Part shown: piece after piece, positions 293 to 12,517 of the stretch
Numbering within the stretch: position 1 is the stretch's first letter
How the letters are laid out: every line of letters starts with the position of its first letter
Virus record (IMG/VR): IMGVR_UViG_3300003322_000571
Coordinates: 62,001 to 126,000 of that record
Direction: 5' to 3' (one strand)
DNA length: 64,000 bases
Position numbers and translations under genes: made by a program
The notes under the pieces: model-generated
Told to the model about the DNA's origin: nothing
The model's database searches: none
The model's input: only the letters and a program-made list of their open reading frames with translations

Positions 293-390
293 GCCAGCGT
301 TTCTAATATTGGCCTTAGGGGTGCCCTTATAAAGCACTAAGACCCGTCTAGATCAGGCGGTTAATGTGGGTTCGATTCCCATCGCTGGTA
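293..390 (+). tRNA. tRNA with anticodon UAU (Ile/AUA by anticodon) and a long variable arm
   Basis: Acceptor GCCAGCG/CGCTGGT with discriminator A390; D-arm TCTAA/TTAGG; anticodon arm GTGCC-CTTATAA-AGCAC; variable stem CCGTCT/AGGCGG; T-arm GTGGG-TTCGATT-CCCAT. CCA is not encoded. Confidence 0.88.
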
Positions 391-1375: not shown

Positions 1376-1560
1376 AACGTGACATCAAAGATCATCCGTT
1401 ATTGAAAACGATGACGGCTGAGCAACTGTTGCAAATGCTCGTTGATGTTCGAGAAGTTGCATGGGTCGAAGGCCAAGATGGACGAACGAAAGAAGATTTT
1501 TACAACGCTTTAACGCAAATTTGTCGCATCACACGTGATGTTGACAACTACCATTTTTAA
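1372..1560 (+). CDS. hypothetical protein
   Basis: ATGA coupling with the previous ORF. Confidence 0.65.
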   Translation: MKRDIKDHPLLKTMTAEQLLQMLVDVREVAWVEGQDGRTKEDFYNALTQICRITRDVDNYHF

Positions 1561-1573
1561 CTGGAGAAACGAT

Positions 1574-3250
1574 ATGTCAAAACTCAATCCAACTGGTCGT
1601 AACGTTACGACAAACATTGTTGCGGTTGCTGCGAACCGTGGTGAACAGCTTGCTGTTTCTGCGAATGGCAACTTGCAATTCAAGAAGGACTCCTACCAGA
1701 CGTTGTACGAAACAACTGTTTCGACGATGCTTGGCAAGGGCAACCAACTGAATTCTGCTGATGCGCTTGTGCAAAAGCTGAAGGCGTCCGTTCGTTCTGT
1801 TGTTGCTGATGGCGCCAGCTCATTCGACTTCATTGCGAACCTCGCAATCCACGCACGTACGGAGATGAACGTCCGTACGATCCCAATCGTTCTTGTGGTT
1901 GAATTTGCGAAGGCGCTCGCCGATCAGCGTCAACCGTTGGTTGCACGTGTTGATGCGATTGAACAAGAACTGACTACAGCTCGTAAGGCTAAGCGTGCGA
2001 CTTCGTCAATCGTTGAGCGCCTGACTGCAGCTCGCGAAGACGCTGAAATCTACACGTATGGCAACATGCGTCAGCTCGTCAATGACGTGATTCAGCGTGC
2101 CGACCAGATCACTGATCTGTACGCATATGCACTGCAAGTGTTCGGTGGCAAGAACAAGATCCCGATGGCGATCAAGCGTGGTGTTGCTGATGCTTTCAAC
2201 AAGTTCAGCGAATACGCGTTCGCGAAGTACAACCGTGACGGTGCTGTCAAGTTCCGTGACGTCCTTCGTATCGTTCACCCAACTGCTTCGACGATCAAGC
2301 AAGGCGAAATCTTTGACAAGATCATGAAGGATACGCTTTCCGTCCCGTACACTTGGGAAACTGAGTTGTCGGCCAACGGTCAGAAGCCAGTTGCAGAACG
2401 TCTGACGCAGAAGCAGCTGTGGACGCAGCTCGTCACGTCTGGTAAGGTCGGTTACATGGCGTTGCTCCGCAACCTGCGTAACATCATCAGTGCTGGTCTT
2501 GATGACGATGTTGTCAAGAAGCATGTTCTCGATGTGATCTCCGATCCTGCACGCGTTGCAAAGAGCAAGCAATTGCCGTATGACTTCATTGAAGCATACA
2601 ACATCGTCAAGCCACTTGACGGTCGTTTCGCAACCGCAGTGTCGAAGGCACTTGATGCTAGTGCTGCGAACTTGCCAGAACTTGGTAAGCGCGTGTGGCT
2701 GATTGTTGACTACTCCGGCTCGATGGGTCATGGTCCGACTTCTGCATTCGGCGGTGGTGTGTTCCTCGCTTCGGCATTGCTGAAGGCTGCAGGTTCGACT
2801 GCTTCTCGTCTTGCTGTGACGTTGTTCGGTTCGACTGCATTGACGTTGAAAGACGTTGATACGAACCATTCGATGCTCGGTCTCCAGCAGATCCTCGAAA
2901 GCTACCGTAAGGATGGCATCAGCGGTTCGACGAATTTCCGTGCAGCTCTTGACCAGAAGTCTCAGCTCGGTTTCGAACCTGACACGATCATTGTGATCAC
3001 TGACGGTGAAGTCAATGGCTTCCCGTACGGCGTGATCAAGAACGTTGCAGGTCGTAGCGTGATGAAGATGGCAGTCAACATGTCTGTTGCAACATCGACT
3101 CCGATGTCGCAGCATGACGGCTGGTATTCAATGGCAGGCTGGTCTCCAGCTATGTTCAAGTGGATCCCGGCAATGCGTGACGCCGGTTCTGTAATCGAAC
3201 AGCTTGCTGTTCCTTACAAGGGTGTCCCTTCAGCTAAGGTTGAAGAATAA
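1574..3250 (+). CDS. rsr: Ro60/Rsr-like TROVE + vWA RNA-binding protein
   Basis: TROVE features (IQRADQIT, KRGVADAFNKFSEYAFAKY, RDVLRIVHP, TWETELS, GYMALLRNLRN, SKQLPY) plus vWA MIDAS (DYSGSM, GSTNF, ITDGE). Start set at the ATG after GGAGA. Confidence 0.93.
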   Translation: MSKLNPTGRNVTTNIVAVAANRGEQLAVSANGNLQFKKDSYQTLYETTVSTMLGKGNQLNSADALVQKLKASVRSVVADGASSFDFIANLAIHARTEMNVRTIPIVLVVEFAKALADQRQPLVARVDAIEQELTTARKAKRATSSIVERLTAAREDAEIYTYGNMRQLVNDVIQRADQITDLYAYALQVFGGKNKIPMAIKRGVADAFNKFSEYAFAKYNRDGAVKFRDVLRIVHPTASTIKQGEIFDKIMKDTLSVPYTWETELSANGQKPVAERLTQKQLWTQLVTSGKVGYMALLRNLRNIISAGLDDDVVKKHVLDVISDPARVAKSKQLPYDFIEAYNIVKPLDGRFATAVSKALDASAANLPELGKRVWLIVDYSGSMGHGPTSAFGGGVFLASALLKAAGSTASRLAVTLFGSTALTLKDVDTNHSMLGLQQILESYRKDGISGSTNFRAALDQKSQLGFEPDTIIVITDGEVNGFPYGVIKNVAGRSVMKMAVNMSVATSTPMSQHDGWYSMAGWSPAMFKWIPAMRDAGSVIEQLAVPYKGVPSAKVEE

Positions 3251-3282
3251 CACTCGTTGAAGGTCAACGACCAACGCAAGAT

Positions 3283-3310
3283 AATAGCCCCGAAAGGGGC
3301 TATTCCTTTT
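3283..3310 (+). terminator. intrinsic terminator after Ro60
   Basis: AATAGCCCC-GAAA-GGGGCTATT-CCTTTT. Confidence 0.8.
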
Positions 3311-3322
3311 GGAGAATACAAA

Positions 3323-3748
3323 ATGGACAACAGAATTTTCAATGTCAACGGACGTGGCCTATCGATGTTGACGTCAACGCTTAAGCTAGCGTTTTGGCAA
3401 AATGCAGGATGCTATGACAAGAGTCAAGACACTGAAACAGTCAAGGGATACACCGTCGAAAAAGACAAAGGCTTGATTTTGCTCTGGGCTGTTGACGAAA
3501 AAGATCCATCACATCAAAAATTCATCGCACCGTTGACAGCTGAAGCCGTCGCACCGCTCGTTGATTTGTGGCTGAAGTCAGACGAAGCGAAACAAATCCC
3601 GTTTGAGCGATGGGAGGATGATTGCGATCATGACGGACACAACACTCTCGGTTGGCGTGTATATTGTGAAGATTGGGGCCATGTAGGAAGGGCAGGATGG
3701 CATGCAACAATTGCAATCAAGCCTGTTTATCTGTGGCACGGCAAATAA
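3323..3748 (+). CDS. hypothetical protein
   Basis: GGAGA SD before ATG 3323; Trp/Gly-rich C-terminus. Confidence 0.75.
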   Translation: MDNRIFNVNGRGLSMLTSTLKLAFWQNAGCYDKSQDTETVKGYTVEKDKGLILLWAVDEKDPSHQKFIAPLTAEAVAPLVDLWLKSDEAKQIPFERWEDDCDHDGHNTLGWRVYCEDWGHVGRAGWHATIAIKPVYLWHGK

Positions 3749-3813
3749 GGGGATAGGTAACTCCTCAACTATTACCTGTAAGTAACGATAACCATAACTA
3801 AAAAGGGTCACTT

Positions 3814-5136
3814 ATGTCAAGTCATGTATTGACGCTCTTCAACCCGATTGTTAGAGCGATTAAAAAGGGATACGTTCAGTATCAGAATCGAAAAGAAGAT
3901 AAAGCGTGGAACACTCTCCGTGCGGAAGAACTTGCAAAACTCGATAGTAAATCTCATAATTGGTACACCGTATTGGTCGATAATCAACTGAAGACAGTTC
4001 GTGGCCAAAAGGAATTGAACGCGAACCGCCAACAAAAGGTTGATGCATCGTACTTCGAATTCTTGTTCAAACTGGGATGCAAGGTTGCACGAGAGTATGC
4101 TGTACTACCAAACATCATCGGCATGCAGCCGTTGCATAGTCCTGTTGGTTTGGTGTATCACATGGAGTACACACAAAAACCAGTCACTTCAGAGCAAAAT
4201 GATGTTGGAAGTGCCGATATCGGTAAGTATCGCCTTGAAGTGATCAGTCATGCTGTCGTTGCATTGACTGAAAGGTTGAGCACCCACGTTGATCCTAACG
4301 TAGCTACTGTCCTGGGACAGAAGGATAAGACACTAGTTGACAAGTTAGTTGACGTTCTCGGGGGAGAAATCGCTCGTGAAATGCTGATTGACATTCTTAA
4401 CGATTTGAGACATCTCGGTCGTCAGAACAGAAATCACTTTGAAGTCATCACCGCATCTGACAGTCATAAAGCAGTATATCTCAACAAAATCTGCAATGAG
4501 ATTGCTGCAGAAACACGACGAGGCCCTGCGAATTGGATTATCGCATCGATTTCAACGGTTTCGAAATTGCAAAGTGCGCCGTTCTCATACTTTAGCTCTG
4601 GTAAGTCCAACCGTGATAGCAGTTTGCTGTTAATGCACGTTGGTCGGCTTAATGGAGTAATTGAAGTTTACGCTTCAACAGAGGTCAAAGACGATGAGAT
4701 TTTGATTGGCTACATGGGCGGTAACGGCGCCACAGATACAGGTTACGTATTTGCTCCATATATTCCTGTTGTTCCAGGTAATGTTGTACTTGATCCTGTA
4801 ACACTTGAGCCGATGGTTGAATTCATGACTCGCTACGGTAAAACCGCATTTAAGAATCTGTCGGACGATTTTGGCAACCTTGTAATCCCACGTCATTCTA
4901 CAGGTGAAAAATACTACCGCATTGTTGAATTCGCAGAACCTAAAGAAGGCGTATACGATCCAACCGCGCTCGTTGAAGATTTTGTGTTCCCTGCGACTAA
5001 AGAACCTCAGTTTCTTGCACCTCTAACAGAGCAATTGCTTGGTAAATCGAACCTTAATATCGAAGAAGACTCGTCTGTTGAGTTGAAAACAAACCTTCCA
5101 GATAGTACTGAGGTGAACGATAAACCGTTCGTATAA
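3814..5136 (+). CDS. divergent T4 gp23/gp24-family capsid protein paralog
   Basis: IIGMQPLHSPVGLVY, TRRGPANWIIAS, GRLNGVIEVY, LIGYMG...DTGYVFAPYIP, DPVTLEP...FMTRYG. Confidence 0.85.
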   Translation: MSSHVLTLFNPIVRAIKKGYVQYQNRKEDKAWNTLRAEELAKLDSKSHNWYTVLVDNQLKTVRGQKELNANRQQKVDASYFEFLFKLGCKVAREYAVLPNIIGMQPLHSPVGLVYHMEYTQKPVTSEQNDVGSADIGKYRLEVISHAVVALTERLSTHVDPNVATVLGQKDKTLVDKLVDVLGGEIAREMLIDILNDLRHLGRQNRNHFEVITASDSHKAVYLNKICNEIAAETRRGPANWIIASISTVSKLQSAPFSYFSSGKSNRDSSLLLMHVGRLNGVIEVYASTEVKDDEILIGYMGGNGATDTGYVFAPYIPVVPGNVVLDPVTLEPMVEFMTRYGKTAFKNLSDDFGNLVIPRHSTGEKYYRIVEFAEPKEGVYDPTALVEDFVFPATKEPQFLAPLTEQLLGKSNLNIEEDSSVELKTNLPDSTEVNDKPFV

Positions 5137-5154
5137 CAATAAGGAATAAAAACC

Positions 5155-5325
5155 ATGTCCAATCAAGTTACTTTCCCAAAGGGCAAGCAAGTCAATCGCA
5201 GTGGTGAACGCACTCGTTTGACGCGTCAAACGACCGTCACTGTTATCCGTAGCGAACCAGCTCGTGACGGCAAGACTCGCGTGTTCTGGAAGTCGCATCG
5301 CGGCGAAGCTAACGCACTCGTCTAA
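5155..5325 (+). CDS. small basic protein, 56 aa (not in track)
   Basis: AAGGA SD, MSNQVTFPKGKQVNRSG...; terminator follows. Confidence 0.7.
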   Translation: MSNQVTFPKGKQVNRSGERTRLTRQTTVTVIRSEPARDGKTRVFWKSHRGEANALV

Positions 5326-5346
5326 TCACAATAGACATTGATCATC

Positions 5347-5372
5347 AACACCGCCCTCGTGGCGGTGTTTTT
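5347..5372 (+). terminator. intrinsic terminator
   Basis: AACACCGCC-CTCGT-GGCGGTGTT-TTT. Confidence 0.8.
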
Positions 5373-5406
5373 GTTCCTGTTTGTTTTCCCCTGCAACTAT
5401 AAGATA

Positions 5407-5681
5407 GTCCGTGAAATACCGGGCGCAATTATGGCTTTGGGAGGTTAGCGTTCGTGCTAATATACCATTCGTTAGGCGGCTTGCAGCGCATAGAACGATA
5501 AACGGCGGAGGGATCCAGGCGTCAATGCCTCCCTTGACTGAAGCAAAACTGATTGACTAACCTTTGATAAAGGCGGCGGGGTACGGCTCTGCTAGTGACC
5601 GGCTGGCCTAACTTCGTGTTGCATAACTACGCTGGGAATCCCGGCTATACCTCCATCGTTTGCATGAGATAACCGGTGGAC
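5407..5681 (+). ncRNA. candidate ~275-nt structured RNA of unknown family
   Basis: No credible ORF in the gap; nested helices 5407-5422/5673-5681, 5423-5433/5622-5632, 5471-5477/5606-5612; possible pseudoknots 5521-5526/5552-5557 and 5440-5449/5644-5654; -10-like TATAAGAT at 5398-5405. Confidence 0.5.
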
Positions 5682-5696
5682 ATTTAAGGAGAGATT

Positions 5697-6257
5697 ATGA
5701 AAGAGATTGAGCGAAAATTCTTGGTTAACTCTGCTCAGTTCAACAGAGACATCAGTGTGCTCGAGAACTACGGAGTGGACATTGTCAAGTATTCGATCAT
5801 GCAAGGTTACTTGTCGACGGGTATTGATATGCCGATTCGCATCCGGCATCGATCGCATTTTGATCCAGTTGCCGTTGCAACGGTCGATGCTTACACGATG
5901 ACTGTTAAGGCTAATCGTACTGGTATCACGTGCGATGAGATCGAGTTCGATATCCCTGGTGATAAGTTTAATCAGCTGTTTAGGCTTTGTGGTGATAACG
6001 TTCTGGTAAAGTCGCGTTATGTCGTACCTTATCGAGGCAGTATTTGGGAAGTTGACATGTTTCATGGGGACTTACAAGGCCTTGTTGTTGCGGAGATTGA
6101 ATTGCAACATGAGGATGATCTTTTCGTACATCCTGTGTGGGTTGATACTCAAGTAACTGCCGACTCGCGGTATGCTAATGCGAACCTCGTGAAGCAGACG
6201 TTTGACATCCTAAGTAACGAATTGGTATGGAAGAATGTTGAACGATTTAGGGTTTAA
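5697..6257 (+). CDS. CYTH-domain (triphosphate tunnel) protein
   Basis: EIERKFLV, IMQGYL, RIR, KSRY, WEVDMFHG..GLVVAEIEL. Confidence 0.9.
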   Translation: MKEIERKFLVNSAQFNRDISVLENYGVDIVKYSIMQGYLSTGIDMPIRIRHRSHFDPVAVATVDAYTMTVKANRTGITCDEIEFDIPGDKFNQLFRLCGDNVLVKSRYVVPYRGSIWEVDMFHGDLQGLVVAEIELQHEDDLFVHPVWVDTQVTADSRYANANLVKQTFDILSNELVWKNVERFRV

Positions 6258-6274
6258 AGGTTAAAGTCACCAAC

Positions 6275-6472
6275 ATGAGCAAACCACACTATCACAAAGA
6301 CGAACGCGGCATTCTGCAAAAGTGCTATCACGGTGCACAGAATTTGCTGACCGATTACAAGTTTTGGATCGGCGTCACATTGAGTTTCCCTCTCGAACAT
6401 TTCATCTGGGAGAAGCTGTGGCCTTTCTATCTGATCTCCGAATGGCTCGGTCTAATTGACCATCTCCACTGA
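6275..6472 (+). CDS. small membrane protein
   Basis: Hydrophobic FWIGVTLSFPLEHFIWEKLWPF segment. Confidence 0.65.
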   Translation: MSKPHYHKDERGILQKCYHGAQNLLTDYKFWIGVTLSFPLEHFIWEKLWPFYLISEWLGLIDHLH

Positions 6473-6645
6473 TGGACGAGTTTAATCCGTACGATCCTGA
6501 GCTTGCGCAACAGATCACAGAACATGCACAGAGATTACTAGATGGTCTTTTGAAGAGTTCCCATCTGCAAAGTAACTCTCCTGTCCAACAGTGGTTCGAA
6601 GCCAATCCACAACTACCTTTCAATGATTTCTGGAATCCAAAATGA
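6472..6645 (+). CDS. hypothetical 57-aa protein (not in track)
   Basis: MDEFNPYDPELAQQI...; translationally coupled at both ends. Confidence 0.55.
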   Translation: MDEFNPYDPELAQQITEHAQRLLDGLLKSSHLQSNSPVQQWFEANPQLPFNDFWNPK

Positions 6646-7790
6646 GCAAATTTGCTGTTGAAGTCGTCCGTATCCGCGCAATCGAACCGATCACCGGAGC
6701 TGACGCAATTGAACTCGCTGTTGTTGGTGGCTACCGTTCTGTCGTTAAGAAGGGTGACTACAAAGTCGGCGATCTCGCCGTGTACATTCCTGAACAAGCA
6801 ATCGTCCCTGATTGGTTGCTCGAAAGGATGAATCTCACTGGTCGTCTTGCTGGGACGAATAAGAACCGCGTAAAAGCAATCAAGCTTCGCGGTTGTCTGT
6901 CACAAGGTTTGCTGATTCCCGTCAAGCATGTTGCAGCTTCCGGTGCGAACTACATTCAGAATGATGTAAGTCTGATTCCTGTTAAGGAAGGCGATGACGT
7001 TGCTGATTTCCTTGGTATCGTTAAGCATGAAGTGCCGATCCCCGCACACCTTGCTGGTGAAGTGTACAACGCAGGTAGCCACTTGACTGTTCCGTACGAT
7101 ATCGAGAACTACAAGAAGTTCGTCGATGTGTTTGAAGATGGTGAAGAAGTCGTGTTCACCGAAAAACTGCATGGCACATTCACCGGTATCGGTATTCTGC
7201 CGCGTGGTGATTGGGAGGAAAAGCACTTCCTCAGCCGTTTCGTTATCTTCAGCAAGGGACTTGGTGCACGAGGTCTGTGCTTCAAGGATTGCGATAACAA
7301 CGCAGACAATCTGTACGTTCGCACGCTGATGGAGTCCGACATCTTCTCTCGTCTGTCTGACCTGATGGAGGAGATGGAAGAAGAGCACGGCTTTGATCGT
7401 CCTTTGTTCCTGCTCGGAGAAACGTTCGGTGCAGGTGTACAAGACTTGCAGTACGGTAACCTGCCGGCTTCGTTCCGCCTGTTTGACGTATGCGTTGGCT
7501 ACCGCGGTGATCAGTTCTTCTTCGACTACGAAGGTCGTGTCCGCCTCGCGAACCATCTTGAAATTCCGATGGTTCCGATTCTGTACAAGGGTCCGTTCAG
7601 CCAAGCGGTGCTCGATCAGTACACGAATGGCAAGGAAACGGTTTCTGGTAAGGAATCACACATCCGCGAAGGTGTTGTGATCACTCCTGTCGTTGAACGT
7701 GAACATCCTGAACTCGGCCGTGTGATCTTGAAGTCTGTCTCTGCAGACTACCTGCTTCGCAAGAATGAAAACGCAACGGAGTACAACTGA
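6642..7790 (+). CDS. RNA ligase, DRB0094/Rnl5 family
   Basis: N-terminal IEPITGADAIE module; motif I TEKLHGT, GETFG, FDV, EGVV, LKSVSADYL. Confidence 0.92.
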   Translation: MSKFAVEVVRIRAIEPITGADAIELAVVGGYRSVVKKGDYKVGDLAVYIPEQAIVPDWLLERMNLTGRLAGTNKNRVKAIKLRGCLSQGLLIPVKHVAASGANYIQNDVSLIPVKEGDDVADFLGIVKHEVPIPAHLAGEVYNAGSHLTVPYDIENYKKFVDVFEDGEEVVFTEKLHGTFTGIGILPRGDWEEKHFLSRFVIFSKGLGARGLCFKDCDNNADNLYVRTLMESDIFSRLSDLMEEMEEEHGFDRPLFLLGETFGAGVQDLQYGNLPASFRLFDVCVGYRGDQFFFDYEGRVRLANHLEIPMVPILYKGPFSQAVLDQYTNGKETVSGKESHIREGVVITPVVEREHPELGRVILKSVSADYLLRKNENATEYN

Positions 7791-7969
7791 TGAATAACGT
7801 CTTAGTAGGGTACGAGGGAAGTGCTGAAGTTGACATCAGCTACTTCTATTGCCCGTACATCCCAGGACAACCTATTCCTGTTGATGTGTGGGATCACCGT
7901 GCTGTTAAGAGGCCAACTGATATCCAGCGCCGGATCATGGAAGCGGTTCAACGTCCTCAACTGTATTGA
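7790..7969 (+). CDS. 59-aa protein carrying a gp23 major-capsid motif (not in track)
   Basis: MNNVLVGYEGSAEVDISYFYCPYIP...; start overlaps the ligase stop (TGATG). Confidence 0.7.
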   Translation: MNNVLVGYEGSAEVDISYFYCPYIPGQPIPVDVWDHRAVKRPTDIQRRIMEAVQRPQLY

Positions 7970-8035
7970 ACCCTAAAGTTGAATAAAACTTTCAGGTCAA
8001 ATACAGTTCACCAACTTTCAACATAGAGGTCATTT

Positions 8036-9133
8036 ATGAACCGTCTTCCTTTTGGTCAGCAACAGACCACAACGGCACAACCAGTTGACATGAGTGCGTT
8101 CATTCAAGTGAACCCGACTCCTGCTCAGCCGGTCGTCGTTCATCAACCGCAGACGCGTGCACTGACTGTGATCAGTGATAAAGACATCCAGAACTTCGGG
8201 ACGGCGTCGACGAATCGGATCTCTGCAACGTCGCAGAAGATTCTCGCTGGTACGAAGGCCTCTGCAGTCGATGACTTTGGCGACAAGCTGAATGAGCTCG
8301 TTGCTACGACAAAGAAGCTCGATCCTGCGGATATCGGCAAGCCTAGTCTGATCAAGAAGCTGTTCGGGATCGGCTCCAGCGTCAAGGATCAATTCCAAGC
8401 GCAGTATCAAACCGTTGAACAGCGGATGAATACGCTGATCGCGGAGATTGATTCGATGGCGAAGCTGATGGAGCAACGAATCGATGATCTCGAGACGATG
8501 TACAAGGAAAATGAGGATGCGTACAAGCAACTCAGCCAAGACATCGCTCAGATCAACAGTATCGTCGCGACGATGAAGGCTGATCTTGCAGCACAACCAA
8601 CGCCGACTGATCCGATCGAAGCGCAGCGTCTCAATGACTATCAGGAACTGATCGACCGGCTCGAAAAGCGTGCTGATGATCTCGAACGTGGAAAGCAGCT
8701 CGTCATCCTGTCGCTGCCGGAAATTCGGATTGAGCAGACGAACAAGCGCAATCTCGTTGCAAGTATCGCAACGCTGAAGAGCACGACGATTCCGGCTTAC
8801 CAAGGTCTGTTCTCGCGTTACATCCTGGCGATGGAAACGAAGAAGGGCAACCAGGTCGTCGCTGCTTTGCAGGATGCAACTGATGAAGCGTTCCGCAAGC
8901 AAGCTGACCTCGTTCGTCAGAATGCGGTTGACTCTGCGAAGGCTCAACAACGGTCTGTCGTGACGACGGAGACGCTGATTCACTGCCGTGATCAGATGCT
9001 TGCAACTCTCGACGACGTCAAGAAGATCAATGACGCTGGCCGTAAGGCACGTCAAGACGCTCGTCCGCAACTCGAACAACTGGAACAGTCGCTGATCGCA
9101 CGCGCTGCTCCGCAACAACTTTCTCACAACTGA
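8036..9133 (+). CDS. telA: toxic anion resistance protein (TelA/KlaB family)
   Basis: Coiled-coil protein with IQNFG, LIKKLFG, QYQTV, RLEKRADDL, LPEIRIEQ..N..L...I, TIP. Confidence 0.85.
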   Translation: MNRLPFGQQQTTTAQPVDMSAFIQVNPTPAQPVVVHQPQTRALTVISDKDIQNFGTASTNRISATSQKILAGTKASAVDDFGDKLNELVATTKKLDPADIGKPSLIKKLFGIGSSVKDQFQAQYQTVEQRMNTLIAEIDSMAKLMEQRIDDLETMYKENEDAYKQLSQDIAQINSIVATMKADLAAQPTPTDPIEAQRLNDYQELIDRLEKRADDLERGKQLVILSLPEIRIEQTNKRNLVASIATLKSTTIPAYQGLFSRYILAMETKKGNQVVAALQDATDEAFRKQADLVRQNAVDSAKAQQRSVVTTETLIHCRDQMLATLDDVKKINDAGRKARQDARPQLEQLEQSLIARAAPQQLSHN

Positions 9134-9149
9134 ACGTAGGAGTTCAAAA

Positions 9150-9887
9150 ATGGCTGGTATCAATCTGCAAAAACGCGCCGAAGCTGTCGGCATCGTCCTG
9201 GCAAAGCGTGGCATCACGAAGGTGCCCCCGGTTCGTGTCGGCATGGCACTGGACGTTTCTGGCTCTGCACAAACGTTCTATACGAGCGGCGTGATGCAAG
9301 AAACGATCGACCGTCTGCTCGGCGTTGCGCTGAAGTTCGACGACAACGGTGAACTCGACTCGTGGCTGTTCCACAACGACGTTCTCCCTCAACTGCCGAC
9401 GCTGACGGAAAGCGATGAAGGTACGTACGTCAAGAACGTCGTCCTCAAGCAACGCGGTCTGTGGGGTGGTACGTCGTACGCTCCTCCGCTGAAGGCTGCG
9501 ATGAGCTACTACTTCCAAGGTCCTGCTCCCGCCCCTGCTGCGAAGTCGGGTGGTCTGTTCGGCCTGTTCAAGAAGGAAGCTGCGCCCGCACCGGCTCCCG
9601 CTACCAAGCAAGACCCGGCAATGCTGCTGTTCGTCACCGACGGTGCGAACGGTGACCGCGCTGAAGCTGCTCAAGTGCTCCGCGAAGCTGCGAAGAGCTC
9701 GCCGGTGTACTTCCAAATGGTCGGTATCGGCCGTGCATCCGAGTTCGACTTCATCCGTCAAATGGCTGACGAGCTGCCGAACGTCGGGTTCGTCAACCTC
9801 AGCACGCTCAGCATGACCGATGAACAGCTGTACGAACAGCTGATCAATCCGGAATTCTGTGAGTGGATCAAGACGCTCAAGGCGTAA
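9150..9887 (+). CDS. vWA domain protein, TerF-C-terminus type
   Basis: ALDVSGS, FDDNGELDSWLF, GGTSYAP, FVTDG, YFQMVGIG. Confidence 0.88.
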   Translation: MAGINLQKRAEAVGIVLAKRGITKVPPVRVGMALDVSGSAQTFYTSGVMQETIDRLLGVALKFDDNGELDSWLFHNDVLPQLPTLTESDEGTYVKNVVLKQRGLWGGTSYAPPLKAAMSYYFQGPAPAPAAKSGGLFGLFKKEAAPAPAPATKQDPAMLLFVTDGANGDRAEAAQVLREAAKSSPVYFQMVGIGRASEFDFIRQMADELPNVGFVNLSTLSMTDEQLYEQLINPEFCEWIKTLKA

Positions 9888-9901: not shown

Positions 9902-9931
9902 AAAAGGGAGGCTCGACCTCCCTTTTCTTTT
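9902..9931 (+). terminator. intrinsic terminator
   Basis: AAAAGGGAGG-CTCGA-CCTCCCTTTT-CTTTT. Confidence 0.8.
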
Positions 9932-9944
9932 CTTAAGGACACAG

Positions 9945-11222
9945 ATGGACACTCAACTATTCATTCCAGAAAAGCTGAAAGTTGGCTACCAAAAGCGTGA
10001 AGGTACGTATACGAGTAAACTAGCGTACGTGATCTACTACGACGCTAAGGGAAAGCTACGTAAGGAAACGTCGTGGCAGGGTTGGAGAAGCAAGGACATC
10101 GAACCTGATGACTTCGAAAACATCCCAACGACAGGGTTCATGATCAACAAGGGAATCACTCGCGGTGGTTATGATTGGTACTCTGATACCGTGACGAAAG
10201 TCCGTATCTGGGATCCGCGCGACTTTGAGATTGAGATCACGCTCGCCAACCTGATCGCGATCCTGATGCATAGTGATGTCTCTAAGCGAGATATCAACGT
10301 TCCTTGTGTGTATGCGTGGCACGGTTCTGACCTCGTTCTTCTTCCGACGAATACAGAAGAATACGAACTGTCGGCGAAGCATACTGCAAAGCAATCGCTC
10401 AAGTTTAGTTCGAAGGAACTAAAGATTGGCGCTACGTACAACATCAAGAAGGACAGCTCACAAGTTGTTTACCTCGGCTACTACGACCATTATGTTCCCG
10501 TTGATAAGTCAGGGGTTAAGGTCAAGCGCTGGTACAGCGTAGATGGATTGATCAAGCAAGGGATCAGCGGCAAGAAGCATGTATTCTACAATCTCACTGA
10601 CGATACGTTCAATTATTCAGCGCCATCTGCATTGATTGCAACGGTTGCGGATCTTGAGATTCATCCTCAGTATGCTGAACTACTAGACAAGTACTATGCA
10701 CAGTTTGAATCGCAGTTGATTGGCGGCTTGTATCTAAAGCCAAAGAATCCTCCTCCTTCTAGTCTACCGAATTACTATTACTACAGGTTCCCCACTTGGG
10801 TAAAGGTGTCTGATACGGTGTATGTCGACATTCAACTGAATGTTAACGTCGAACGTCCATATCATTATCACTGGAATGATCCAGTCAAACGGAACAAGGA
10901 TATGAGGATCGTCATTGATACAAAAATCAAGAACATTTGTGTCTATGACGAGGATACCAACTCTGTTAAGCTCAAGCCGGAATACTGGTCAGCATTCCCA
11001 ATCAGTTTCAACGATCCACAAATCACCGCTGTTGTGCAGCCGATCTTTGACATGTGGAGGCAGTTAGTCCAAGCGGAGTTCGAACAAACCCACGACATCT
11101 CTTATAACCACGAGGAACATTACAAGAAGATTGAGGCACAATTCCAACACGTGTTGGGGGAACGTCCCGCTTTTGTGATGATCGACGGTAAGAAATGTGC
11201 TAATGGTCCCACCATCTACTAA
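9945..11222 (+). CDS. hypothetical protein, paralog 1
   Basis: N-terminal ~200 aa similar to the next gene (IPE..VG.Q.R.GTYT.KLAYVIY.D..GK.RKETSWQ.WR; RIWDPRDFE.EIT). Confidence 0.85.
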   Translation: MDTQLFIPEKLKVGYQKREGTYTSKLAYVIYYDAKGKLRKETSWQGWRSKDIEPDDFENIPTTGFMINKGITRGGYDWYSDTVTKVRIWDPRDFEIEITLANLIAILMHSDVSKRDINVPCVYAWHGSDLVLLPTNTEEYELSAKHTAKQSLKFSSKELKIGATYNIKKDSSQVVYLGYYDHYVPVDKSGVKVKRWYSVDGLIKQGISGKKHVFYNLTDDTFNYSAPSALIATVADLEIHPQYAELLDKYYAQFESQLIGGLYLKPKNPPPSSLPNYYYYRFPTWVKVSDTVYVDIQLNVNVERPYHYHWNDPVKRNKDMRIVIDTKIKNICVYDEDTNSVKLKPEYWSAFPISFNDPQITAVVQPIFDMWRQLVQAEFEQTHDISYNHEEHYKKIEAQFQHVLGERPAFVMIDGKKCANGPTIY

Positions 11223-11224
11223 TC

Positions 11225-12517
11225 ATGAGCTCTAAACTATACATCCCGGAAACGATCCTTGTTGGTTTTCAGAACCGCGCTGGAACGTACACAGGCAAAC
11301 TCGCCTACGTGATCTACAAGGATCATACTGGCAAGATCCGCAAGGAAACGTCCTGGCAGAACTGGCGTGACCATGACATCGACACCCTCGAGCTCAAGAA
11401 TACTCCACAGAGCGGCTTTACGTTCAACAAGGGTGTTCAGCGAGATAACCGGTGGGCTGGTTCCGGTCGTTCGATGTTCCGTATCTGGGATCCGCGCGAC
11501 TTCGAGTTCGAGATTACCGTTGACAACACGATTGCTATTCTAACGCATAGTGACGTGTCTAAGCGTGACATCACAGAACCATGTGTGTTCGCTTGGGACG
11601 GTACTGAACTGATCCTGCTGCCGATCAATTCTGAAGAATACCAGTCGTCACTTGTCCATACAGCACGTCAAGCAAAGAACGTTGAGACTAAAGACCTTGT
11701 TGTCGGTCATTCGTACATGGCGAAGAAAGAAGGCGTAGCCGTCGTCTACATGGGCCGTCATGACGTGTACGAATGGAAGCAATCGTACAGCGGACATAAT
11801 GCTGGATACAATTACGGCCATACGTCAACTGGCATGGTTAAGAAGAAGGCGAAAGCTCATACGTTCTACGTTCCTCCGTACGAAGAAACGACAAAATCGG
11901 GTTATGTGATCAAGCACGCTGCAGAGTTTGTAACGAAAGCAGACCCGAAGGCATATCTGTCTGAGTGCGTTCAAGCAGAAGTGCATGAAGACTATCCGAC
12001 GCTGATTGAACAGTTTTACGGACAAGGAACTCATCAAAAGATGAGCGGGTTGACGATTGAACCGTACGAAGACCGGATCTTTAAGAACAGCACAATCGGC
12101 GGTTGGCTGATGCTGTCTGATACAGAAGCAATTCGTATTCAGACGGATGCCAATGGCAATGTCAGGTGGCAAAAGTCAGCTGCATTCGACGGTAATGTCG
12201 TTCAACTGTCGCATGGTGAGGAAGTTGACAGGTATGCAAGTACGTACTACCATTACGGGAACAACCAGCGCGTTTACCCTCGTCGTGACCTTCCGGGATT
12301 GAGTGCTCAAGATGAACGTGTTGCAAGTATCATTGAGCAAATGATGCGCGACTTGCTTGACGGTGGGTTTGCTTTGTCAACCGACAATGTTGAAGAAAAT
12401 GTCAAGATTCGTCTTGCGAATGGTGAATTGCTCCGTCAAATGTGTCATAAATACAAGGTCGGGTACTTGAGGTCAGTAATGGCCGATGGTACTGTGGCAA
12501 CTAGCAAATCTTTCTAA
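11225..12517 (+). CDS. hypothetical protein, paralog 2
   Basis: Tandem paralog of 9945..11222. Confidence 0.85.
   Translation: MSSKLYIPETILVGFQNRAGTYTGKLAYVIYKDHTGKIRKETSWQNWRDHDIDTLELKNTPQSGFTFNKGVQRDNRWAGSGRSMFRIWDPRDFEFEITVDNTIAILTHSDVSKRDITEPCVFAWDGTELILLPINSEEYQSSLVHTARQAKNVETKDLVVGHSYMAKKEGVAVVYMGRHDVYEWKQSYSGHNAGYNYGHTSTGMVKKKAKAHTFYVPPYEETTKSGYVIKHAAEFVTKADPKAYLSECVQAEVHEDYPTLIEQFYGQGTHQKMSGLTIEPYEDRIFKNSTIGGWLMLSDTEAIRIQTDANGNVRWQKSAAFDGNVVQLSHGEEVDRYASTYYHYGNNQRVYPRRDLPGLSAQDERVASIIEQMMRDLLDGGFALSTDNVEENVKIRLANGELLRQMCHKYKVGYLRSVMADGTVATSKSF

What the first reader, a model, noticed from the sequence alone, without database searches (positions are those of the whole stretch)
7790..7969. 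Unannotated 59-aa ORF built around an isolated major-capsid motif
Seen: translationally coupled to the RNA ligase, it encodes VLVGYEGSAEVDISYFYCPYIP. This matches the gp23 C-terminal signature (VGYKG....DAG.FY.PY.P) and the same motif in 3814..5136 (ILIGYMG...DTGYVFAPYIP); the remainder is unrelated. Established: capsid proteins or their peptides are sensed by Lit and CapRel. Inference: a capsid-epitope mimic or sponge, or an assembly modulator; it falls below the ORF-track cutoff.
Basis: partly seen in the sequence, partly recalled or inferred. Interest (0 to 1): 0.68.

Follow-up and report, generated by a model that had tools for sequence, protein, structure and literature searches.

The report
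Conserved mini-protein made from capsid fragment
A 59-residue gene in an uncultured 350-kb jumbo phage is a real, conserved small protein built from the most conserved beta-hairpin of the phage's major capsid protein plus a new helical tail, and it probably acts as a stand-in for that capsid segment, though its partner is unknown.

Summary
ORF 7790..7969 (+) encodes 59 aa. Its ATG overlaps the RNA-ligase stop (TGATG), with GGAG 8 nt upstream. Residues 2-26 match the gp23 major-capsid-protein (MCP) family above Pfam's cut-off, and match the genome's own MCP best (15/23).

It is not a recombination scar. An exhaustive HMMER search and two profile searches found about 25 clusters of stand-alone 55-112-aa homologues, all unnamed and all from metagenomes. 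They share the hairpin (GYKGQxxxDxGYF[FY]CPYIPG) and also a non-capsid tail (PTEIQxRIMxxVR). Four other phage contigs carry it in the same place: TROVE, gp23 paralog, CYTH, RNA ligase, mini, TelA, vWA. Elsewhere it sits in replication, repair or nucleotide-metabolism gene arrays, never in a head module. dN/dS is about 0.25, and codon use is gene-like. It is missing from three near-complete related jumbo genomes, from 50,697 cultured-phage records and from PHROGs.

Function is inferred only. The hairpin maps to T4 gp23 residues 434-456. That is not the Gol/Lit region, but it includes A455, the gp31-chaperonin bypass site. My best reading is a competitive mimic of this MCP segment. The leading candidate partner is a host sensor, and the chaperonin or assembly machinery is nearly as likely. 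AlphaFold2 folds only the tail.

The parts
7790..7969 (+). Mini-gp23 gene, 59 aa (P0001). It belongs to an unnamed family of 55-112-aa phage proteins.
   Evidence: ORF list; Pfam Gp23 29.6 bits; stand-alone homologues; dN/dS 0.22-0.26; codon score 0.14, reached by 1.8% of spurious small ORFs
7793..7867 (+). MCP-derived segment, residues 2-26 (NNVLVGYEGSAEVDISYFYCPYIPG). It is two beta-strands and a loop homologous to own-MCP residues about 396-421 and to T4 gp23 about 434-456.
   Evidence: BLASTP 15/23 to own MCP; hhalign 98.5%; T4 mapping. Mini P25 aligns with T4 gp23 A455, the gp31-bypass site (PMC9546572).
7913..7954 (+). Conserved non-capsid tail, residues 42-55 (PTDIQRRIMEAVQR), a predicted amphipathic helix.
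   Evidence: T43 and Q46 invariant; I49, M50 and V53 in at least 90% of 21 members. AF2 helix 44-54; pLDDT about 79 for residues 41-50 and about 70 for 51-59. No match to MCPs.
7778..7792 (+). Translation start region: GGAG (7778-7781), an 8-nt spacer, and an ATG that overlaps the ligase stop codon (TGATG).
   Evidence: Sequence. The same junction (ACGGAGTACAAC-TAATG) occurs in relative L011.
6642..7790 (+). Upstream gene: RNA ligase (N-terminal PHA02142 OB fold plus RNA_ligase domain).
   Evidence: Pfam and PHROG; directly precedes the mini gene in L011 and L107; in L109 a 195-nt gap and in L110 a 65-aa ORF lies between them
8036..9133 (+). Downstream gene: TelA-like protein.
   Evidence: Pfam TelA 178 bits; follows the mini gene in L011, L109 and L110, and in L107 after one extra ORF
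9150..9887 (+). vWA-TerF-like gene, the last gene before the terminator-like hairpin at 9902-9926.
   Evidence: Pfam; terminator scan
3814..5136 (+). 440-aa gp23 paralog in the same conserved cluster. It is not the true MCP.
   Evidence: Pfam Gp23 124.5 bits; true MCP elsewhere in the genome; cluster orthologues 31-44% identical
5347..5369 (+). Terminator-like hairpin. With the one at 9902-9926 it brackets a putative transcription unit: CYTH, two small ORFs, Rnl, mini, TelA, vWA.
   Evidence: Consensus scan only

Best explanation
Shown: this is a genuine small protein gene. It belongs to an undescribed family in uncultured large and jumbo phages that have gp23-type capsids. The family arose by exaptation of a short C-terminal piece of a gp23-type MCP. 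That piece is two beta-strands in short members such as this one and three in long members. It was joined to a new one- or two-helix tail. The family has since been kept under purifying selection as an accessory gene in non-structural gene arrays.

Inferred: the protein works as a competitive mimic of that invariant MCP segment. The capsid-like part is probably unfolded on its own. It would bind, by beta-strand addition, a partner that normally engages this segment of nascent or unassembled MCP. The helical tail would supply solubility or a second contact.

My preferred partner is a low-abundance host surveillance or abortive-infection factor that reads this invariant MCP peptide. In that case the mini-protein is a decoy, made from a low-expression non-structural operon that I assume is expressed before the head genes. 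The host GroEL/phage co-chaperonin folding route, or the capsomer interface, is almost as likely a target.

The confidence figure covers the generic mimic or competitor mechanism. For the host-sensor decoy specifically I put about 0.25-0.3.
For: Real gene:
- Stand-alone homologues of 55-112 aa cover the whole length.
- The position after the RNA ligase and before TelA is conserved in L011, L107, L109 and L110. Neighbouring proteins there are 29-82% identical and the mini 46-59%.
- dN/dS is 0.26 for L011 vs L109 and 0.22 for window vs L011. Rnl and TelA give 0.12-0.18 in the same comparisons.
- Codon use is gene-like.

MCP origin:
- hhalign gives 98.5%, E 3.7e-15, against MCP residues 376-427. 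The match includes the extra N-terminal strand of long members.
- The residues invariant in 60 MCPs (K, G, D, G-Y-F-Y-C-P-Y-x-P) are mostly the ones the mini family keeps.

Not autonomously folded:
- AF2 gives confident structure only to the helices, in both the 59-aa and an 83-aa member.

Accessory, non-structural role:
- Contexts are RNA repair/Ter, Mre11-Rad50, clamp loader/CCA/RlaP, and nucleotide metabolism.
- It is absent from the near-complete jumbo genomes G005, G006 and G007 and from 50,697 cultured-phage records.
- It occurs with and without the 400-440-aa paralog.

Precedent for sensing:
- A conserved linear gp23 peptide (Gol) is sensed by Lit (PMC3014915).
- Capsid proteins trigger CapRel, Thoeris and CBASS (PMC13728456; PMC13243611).
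Against: No partner has been identified and no expression data exist. There is no RNA run for this phage. The MCP-plus-mini complex prediction gave no answer. No known defence system is reported to read this particular gp23 segment. A fragment that binds a sensor might trigger it rather than block it.

The residues the mini keeps are the MCP's structural core residues. That fits docking into an MCP-fold protein or a chaperone at least as well as it fits mimicry of a surface epitope.

No covariation between the mini hairpin and the same genome's MCP hairpin was seen in three genomes. Early or middle timing is inferred from gene neighbourhood only. Promoter scans were uninformative.
Confidence: 0.45

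Rival explanations
1. Modulator of MCP folding or assembly. The mini-protein pairs its hairpin with the phage's own MCP (or gp24-like paralog) or with the GroEL/co-chaperonin machine. It would template, delay or tune folding of the beta-sheet that decides chaperonin dependence, or formation of capsomers.
For: In T4 gp23 the single change A455V removes the need for the gp31 co-chaperonin. A455 aligns with P25 of the mini (PYVA vs PYIP). The gp24-bypass change K420R lies at the start of the extra strand kept by long family members, at the intracapsomer interface (PMC9546572; numbering). The genome encodes its own Cpn10-like protein but no Cpn60, as does mini-carrying G001. The mini keeps the same residues that are invariant in MCPs.
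Against: It is never found in a head-gene module. It is absent from three near-complete related jumbo genomes and from all cultured gp23-type phages searched, so it is not a core assembly factor. A small ORF coupled to an RNA-ligase gene is unlikely to match the very high MCP level (inference). The short form here lacks the K420-equivalent strand.
Confidence: 0.27
2. Weapon against competitors. The fragment would act as a dominant-negative that poisons capsid folding or assembly of co-infecting gp23-type phages, or as a decoy for satellite proteins that hijack the MCP.
For: The motif is near-universal in gp23-type MCPs. In five contigs the gene lies beside TelA/TerF/TerC genes, which have been proposed to act against superinfecting phages (PMC7824862). 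Its distribution is patchy and accessory.
Against: The carrier's own MCP has the same motif, so self-poisoning would have to be avoided by an unknown means. There is no direct evidence.
Confidence: 0.1
3. A function unrelated to capsids. The hairpin would be a convenient structural module, and the protein would work with neighbouring RNA-repair or Ter proteins or in some other host-takeover role.
For: It is tightly linked and start-stop overlapped with the RNA ligase in three of the five syntenic loci (window, L011, L107). The tail is conserved and is the only confidently predicted structure.
Against: In most other genomes the neighbours differ: Mre11/Rad50, guanylate kinase, clamp loader, unknown genes. 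So the function does not depend on the ligase or TelA. Retention of the MCP-invariant residues over deep divergence would be unexplained.
Confidence: 0.15
4. A non-functional relic: a recombination scar or decaying pseudogene fragment of a capsid gene that happens to be open.
For: The window's copy is the shortest form in its syntenic group. It lacks the N- and C-terminal extensions of L011, L109 and L110. There are no expression data.
Against: About 25 independent clusters keep an open frame and the same non-capsid tail. dN/dS is 0.22-0.26. Codon use is gene-like. Short forms of 55-66 aa are the majority of the family. The start junction is conserved.
Confidence: 0.03

Closest known systems
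C-terminal conserved hairpin of gp23-type major capsid proteins (Pfam PF07068; T4 gp23 about 434-456; PDB 5VF3, 6UZC, 7VS5)
   Same: Homologous sequence: G-Y-K-G, D, G-Y-F-Y-C-P-Y-I-P. The loop has the same length as in T4 gp23.
   Different: Only about 25-50 of 400-520 residues are present. There is no N-arm, spine helix, insertion domain or A domain. A new helical tail replaces the rest, and the gene lies outside the head module.
T4 gp24 and other full-length gp23 paralogs, including window 3814..5136
   Same: Duplicated derivatives of the MCP gene in the same genomes. In five contigs the 398-440-aa paralog lies 2-3 kb upstream of the mini gene. T4 also has gene 24 next to an RNA-ligase gene, rnlB.
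   Different: Those are complete HK97-fold proteins. The mini-family profile scores true MCPs (33-40 bits) above the cluster paralogs (17-34 bits). The mini also occurs in genomes with no such paralog.
Gol peptide of T4 gp23 (activator of the Lit protease with EF-Tu)
   Same: A short, highly conserved linear piece of gp23 that has biological activity of its own and is read by a host defence (PMC3014915).
   Different: Gol lies in the first quarter of gp23 and is not a separate gene. The segment here is near the C-terminus and is encoded as a stand-alone protein with an added tail.
Small phage proteins that engage capsid sensors (Bas11 Gp54 with CapRel-SJ46) and phage anti-defence sponges or binders (Tad, Acb, TadIV-1)
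   Same: Small accessory phage proteins from non-structural regions that act on host immune sensing (PMC13728456; PMC13243611).
   Different: By the descriptions read here, none is described as derived from a capsid protein. Gp54 activates rather than blocks. The sponges bind nucleotides. No match to PADLOC, NCBIfam or PHROG models apart from the MCP model.

Membership tests
Gp23 major capsid protein family (Pfam PF07068) | Sequence scores above the family's curated cut-off | tested here: met
   29.6 bits against a cut-off of 24.4, E 6e-7. 18 of 21 family members also hit the MCP PHROG phrog_138.
Gp23 major capsid protein family (Pfam PF07068) | Complete HK97-type capsid protein covering the profile (about 400-520 aa) | tested here: not met
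   59 aa; only profile positions 301-341 of 376 are matched. hhalign covers MCP 376-427 only.
Gp23 major capsid protein family (Pfam PF07068) | Encoded in the head module beside scaffold and protease genes | tested here: not met
   The true MCP, with a scaffold-like gene upstream, lies about 172 kb away. The mini gene lies between the RNA ligase and TelA.
New mini-gp23 family (defined here) | 55-112 aa; hairpin GYKGxxxxDxGYF[FY]CPYIPG followed by the tail PTxIQxxIMxxV | tested here: met
   Alignments A1 and A3. Profile score of P0001 is 81-94 bits.
Gol-type activator of Lit protease | Corresponds to the 29-residue Gol segment in the first quarter of gp23 | tested here: not met
   The motif maps to T4 gp23 about 434-456 of 521. 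Gol location is from PMC3014915.
gp24-type vertex protein | Full-length gp23 paralog able to form pentamers | tested here: not met
   Length is 59 aa. The hairpin of T4 gp24 (about 322-347 of 427) is only one element of a whole fold.
Known defence or anti-defence protein families | Match to a curated model | tested here: not met
   No hit in PADLOC or NCBIfam for four family members. Dedicated anti-defence libraries were not available.
Capsid-mimic decoy (functional class, not a sequence family) | Binds a partner that also binds the MCP and competes with it | not testable with these tools
   The partner is unknown. The single complex job (MCP plus mini) returned no answer.

The most novel reading that the evidence does not exclude
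Some large phages carry a dedicated capsid-peptide decoy. It is a microprotein copied from the one stretch of the major capsid protein that cannot mutate. It would be made from a non-structural operon, presumably before the head genes, and would blind a host sensor or abortive-infection factor that recognises that stretch in nascent capsid protein. This would be the first anti-defence protein derived from the trigger itself.
Probability: 0.25. Interest if true: 0.85.

Novelty: new variant of a known kind. Interest (0 to 1): 0.56.

Why it matters
Capsid proteins are among the commonest triggers of bacterial immunity, and phages usually escape by point mutation. A conserved stand-alone copy of an invariant capsid segment suggests two other routes. 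One is mimicry of the trigger. The other is trans-acting control of the chaperonin-dependent step of capsid folding, because the segment contains the T4 gp31-bypass position. Either outcome would define a new class of phage microprotein. It would also give a 60-residue handle on how gp23-type capsid proteins are recognised before assembly. The family also shows that sub-100-aa ORFs carrying partial domain hits should not be dismissed as scars.

Tried and rejected
**Complex prediction.** The job with own MCP (alignment A4) plus mini (A3) returned 'no answer', score 0.00. It is not used as evidence either way.

**AF2 monomers.** The 59-aa protein gave pLDDT 66.5 and the 83-aa member P0012 gave 68.5. 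Only the tail helices were predicted. I ran no fold search because the models are too weak.

**Tail homology to the MCP.** Pfam's alignment runs to residue 50. Some tblastn matches to MCPs span the whole query at 31-37% identity. T4 gp24 'PESLQPSIGLLVRY' looks similar by eye. A tail-only profile nevertheless gave only scattered, non-significant hits in 63 MCPs and paralogs. Rejected.

**Origin from the neighbouring paralog.** I suspected this because the L011 and L107 paralogs share the short loop. Rejected: the family profile scores true MCPs higher, and the short loop also occurs in T4 gp23.

**Recent copy or gene conversion from the own MCP.** The DNA core is 23/25 identical. Only 5 of 8 synonymous sites match, all at preferred codons, and the flanks are diverged. 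Not supported.

**Covariation of mini and own-MCP hairpins.** None was seen in three genomes.

**Close relatives of the genome.**
- megablast against phages found nothing.
- The single-protein IMG/VR scans with the paralog and with TelA found nothing.
- RNA-ligase relatives L005 and L006 are not syntenic and lack the gene.

**Expression.** No RNA run holds the locus. The source is a root metagenome. Soil-metagenome contigs cover only fragments: 7860-8106 with one difference and 7930-8344 with five.

**Promoters.** The T4 late-promoter word TATAAATA occurs only 8 times in the genome and not near this operon. The sigma-70 scan was at or below background. Timing remains an inference.

**Other searches with no useful result.** Protein atlas; PDB by sequence; PADLOC and NCBIfam; literature searches for capsid-fragment proteins or decoys.

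Full report
**1. What is in the sequence**

ORF 7790..7969 (+) encodes 59 residues: MNNVLVGYEGSAEVDISYFYCPYIPGQPIPVDVWDHRAVKRPTDIQRRIMEAVQRPQLY.
- Its ATG shares one base with the stop codon of the upstream RNA-ligase gene (6642..7790; TGATG).
- A GGAG lies 8 nt upstream of the ATG.
- Downstream come a TelA-like gene (8036..9133) and a vWA-TerF-like gene (9150..9887).
- Terminator-like hairpins at 5347-5369 and 9902-9926 bracket a putative unit: CYTH, two small ORFs, ligase, mini-ORF, TelA, vWA. These are consensus matches only.

The window is bases 62001-126000 of a complete 350,089-bp virus record with terminal repeats. The record was assembled from a root metagenome.

**2. Is the capsid motif real?**

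Yes.
- Pfam Gp23 (PF07068) matches residues 2-50 at 29.6 bits, above the curated cut-off of 24.4.
- A six-frame scan of the whole genome finds three gp23-like places:
  - the true MCP, 473 aa, 325 bits, next to a scaffold-like gene;
  - the 440-aa paralog at window 3814..5136;
  - this ORF.
- The ORF matches its own MCP best, 15 of 23 residues over positions 4-25. It matches the paralog at 11/32.
- In T4 gp23 numbering the segment is about 434-456 of 521.

**3. It is a conserved gene, not a scar**

*Homologues.*
- A word-indexed search limited to similar lengths found only the protein itself.
- An exhaustive HMMER search of 1.84 billion representatives found ten short stand-alone proteins of 62-97 aa, eight of them aligning over residues 1-55; the other two, P0014 and P0015, have unrelated tails and were left out of the family alignment.
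- Two profile rounds raised this to about 25 clusters of 55-112 aa.
- All are unnamed and all come from metagenomes. Several lie on contigs of 330-350 kb.

*Shared features*.
- The hairpin is GYKGQxxxDxGYF[FY]CPYIPG.
- The tail PTEIQxRIMxxVR is also shared and has no counterpart in MCPs.
- D15, G26, T43 and Q46 are invariant. G7, Y8, F19, C21, P22, Y23, P25, I49, M50 and V53 are kept in at least 90% of members.
- Long members add an N-terminal strand (YKVYRxPERR). hhalign aligns it with the preceding MCP strand. The family profile against a 60-sequence MCP profile gives probability 98.5%, E 3.7e-15, over MCP residues 376-427.

*Conserved position.* Four other contigs (L011, L107, L109, L110) carry the gene in the same cluster: TROVE/vWA, small ORF, gp23 paralog, small ORF, CYTH, RNA ligase, mini, TelA, vWA-TerF. 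L011 even has the same start junction.

*Sequence identity and selection in that cluster*.

| Gene | Identity between contigs |
|---|---|
| RNA ligase | 70-78% (29% to L107) |
| TelA | 46-82% |
| gp23 paralog | 31-44% |
| mini | 46-68% |

- dN/dS for the mini gene is 0.26 (L011 vs L109, dS 0.9) and 0.22 (window vs L011). The ligase and TelA give 0.12-0.18 in the same comparisons.
- Codon usage in the ORF frame scores 0.14 bits per codon. That is above 99.9% of out-of-frame windows and is reached by only 1.8% of spurious small ORFs in this genome.

**4. Where else it sits, and where it is missing**

| Locus | Neighbouring genes |
|---|---|
| L017 | between Mre11-like and Rad50-like genes |
| L022, L023 | clamp-loader, CCA-adding/PolyA-polymerase and RlaP genes |
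| L103 | after a guanylate-kinase gene |
| L104-L106 | dCTP deaminase/dUTPase, NUDIX and PTPS genes |
| L008-L016 | arrays of small overlapping ORFs |

- It was never found in a head module.
- Genomes G001 (97% complete) and G003 have an MCP and a mini gene but no 400-aa paralog.
- The near-complete gp23-type jumbo genomes G005, G006 and G007 have only full-length gp23 genes.
- No stand-alone member occurs in 50,697 cultured-phage records.
- No PHROG, PADLOC or NCBIfam model covers it.

It is therefore an accessory gene of patchy distribution.

**5. Origin**

- In each genome examined, the mini has a hairpin loop one residue shorter than that genome's own MCP.
- The family shares the PG turn and the tail.
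- This points to one ancient exaptation rather than repeated fragmentation.
- The family profile scores true MCPs above the cluster paralogs. The DNA shows no sign of recent copying.

**6. Structure**

- AF2 with the family alignment gives mean pLDDT 66.5 for the 59-aa protein, with helices at 31-37 and 44-54.
- It gives 68.5 for the 83-aa member P0012, with helices at 44-54 and 63-74.
- The capsid-derived part is not predicted to fold alone. This fits a segment that becomes ordered on a partner. It could also reflect the shallow alignment.

**7. Mechanism (inference)**

Three facts constrain it.
- (a) The mini keeps most of the residues that are invariant in MCPs.
- (b) It is accessory and non-structural in context (section 4).
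- (c) In T4 this very segment is genetically important:
  - A455V in gp23 abolishes the need for the gp31 co-chaperonin, and A455 aligns with P25 of the mini;
  - the gp24-bypass change K420R lies at the start of the strand retained by long members, at the intracapsomer interface (PMC9546572; numbering).

The phage encodes a Cpn10-like protein and no Cpn60.

I conclude that the protein most likely acts as a competitive stand-in for this MCP segment. Two partners are plausible.
- A host factor that reads it in unassembled MCP. This is favoured by the accessory distribution, the conflict-gene neighbourhood and the likely low expression. There is a precedent in the Gol peptide sensed by Lit (PMC3014915) and in the many capsid-triggered systems.
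- The folding/assembly route, favoured by fact (c).

The Lit/Gol system itself is excluded as the target, because Gol lies in the first quarter of gp23. Nothing here tests binding. The one complex job returned no answer.

**8. Verdict**

- The functional reading stays open.
- The family is an undescribed derivative of a known family: a stand-alone MCP-hairpin microprotein.
- Interest is moderate to high. It is a clean, conserved and unexpected case, with concrete laboratory tests available. There is no cultured carrier and no functional evidence yet.

Noticed in passing
window 1535..9887; also L011, L107, L109, L110: A gene cluster is conserved in five phage contigs: TROVE/vWA (Ro-like), small ORF, 398-440-aa gp23 paralog, small ORF, CYTH, RNA ligase with an N-terminal OB fold, mini-gp23, TelA, vWA-TerF (TerC further on). 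The gp23 paralog sits among RNA-repair and Ter genes, far from the head module. It evolves much faster (31-44% identity) than its neighbours. Its role, whether vertex protein or something else, is unclear. T4 also has gene 24 next to rnlB.
   Followed up: partly
window 293..390 (+): Rfam tRNA model hit (32.4 bits, just over the cut-off) that ARAGORN does not call. It lies about 1.1 kb upstream of the TROVE/Ro-like gene. It could be a tRNA-like or Y-RNA-like partner of the Ro protein.
   Followed up: no
window 9945..11222 and 11225..12517 (+): Two tandem paralogous genes of 425 and 430 aa, 39% identical over the first 310 or so residues (phrog_2475, function unknown). There is a single orthologue in L011, L109 and L110.
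   Followed up: partly
G000:C1:207028-207285 (-), outside the window: The phage encodes a Cpn10/GroES-like protein (23.2 bits, above the cut-off) but no Cpn60. This suggests that capsid folding depends on host GroEL, as in T4.
   Followed up: partly
G004:C1:244572-244640 (-) and G001:C1:163192-163275 (-): Other jumbo phages hold further short open frames (80 and 141 aa) with weak partial gp23 matches. One lies 4 kb from its MCP gene. These may be other capsid-fragment genes or true remnants.
   Followed up: no
L109 4813..5478 (-) compared with L110: A NUMOD3 homing-endonuclease gene is inserted just upstream of the RNA ligase in L109 and is absent from the otherwise near-identical L110. In L110 a 65-aa ORF fills the gap between the ligase and the mini gene.
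   Followed up: no
L008 443..1012, L014 6860..7441, L022 6866..7444: A 189-195-aa protein with a weak DNA_pol3_finger match recurs within one to four genes of the mini gene in three unrelated contexts. This may be a linked gene.
   Followed up: no
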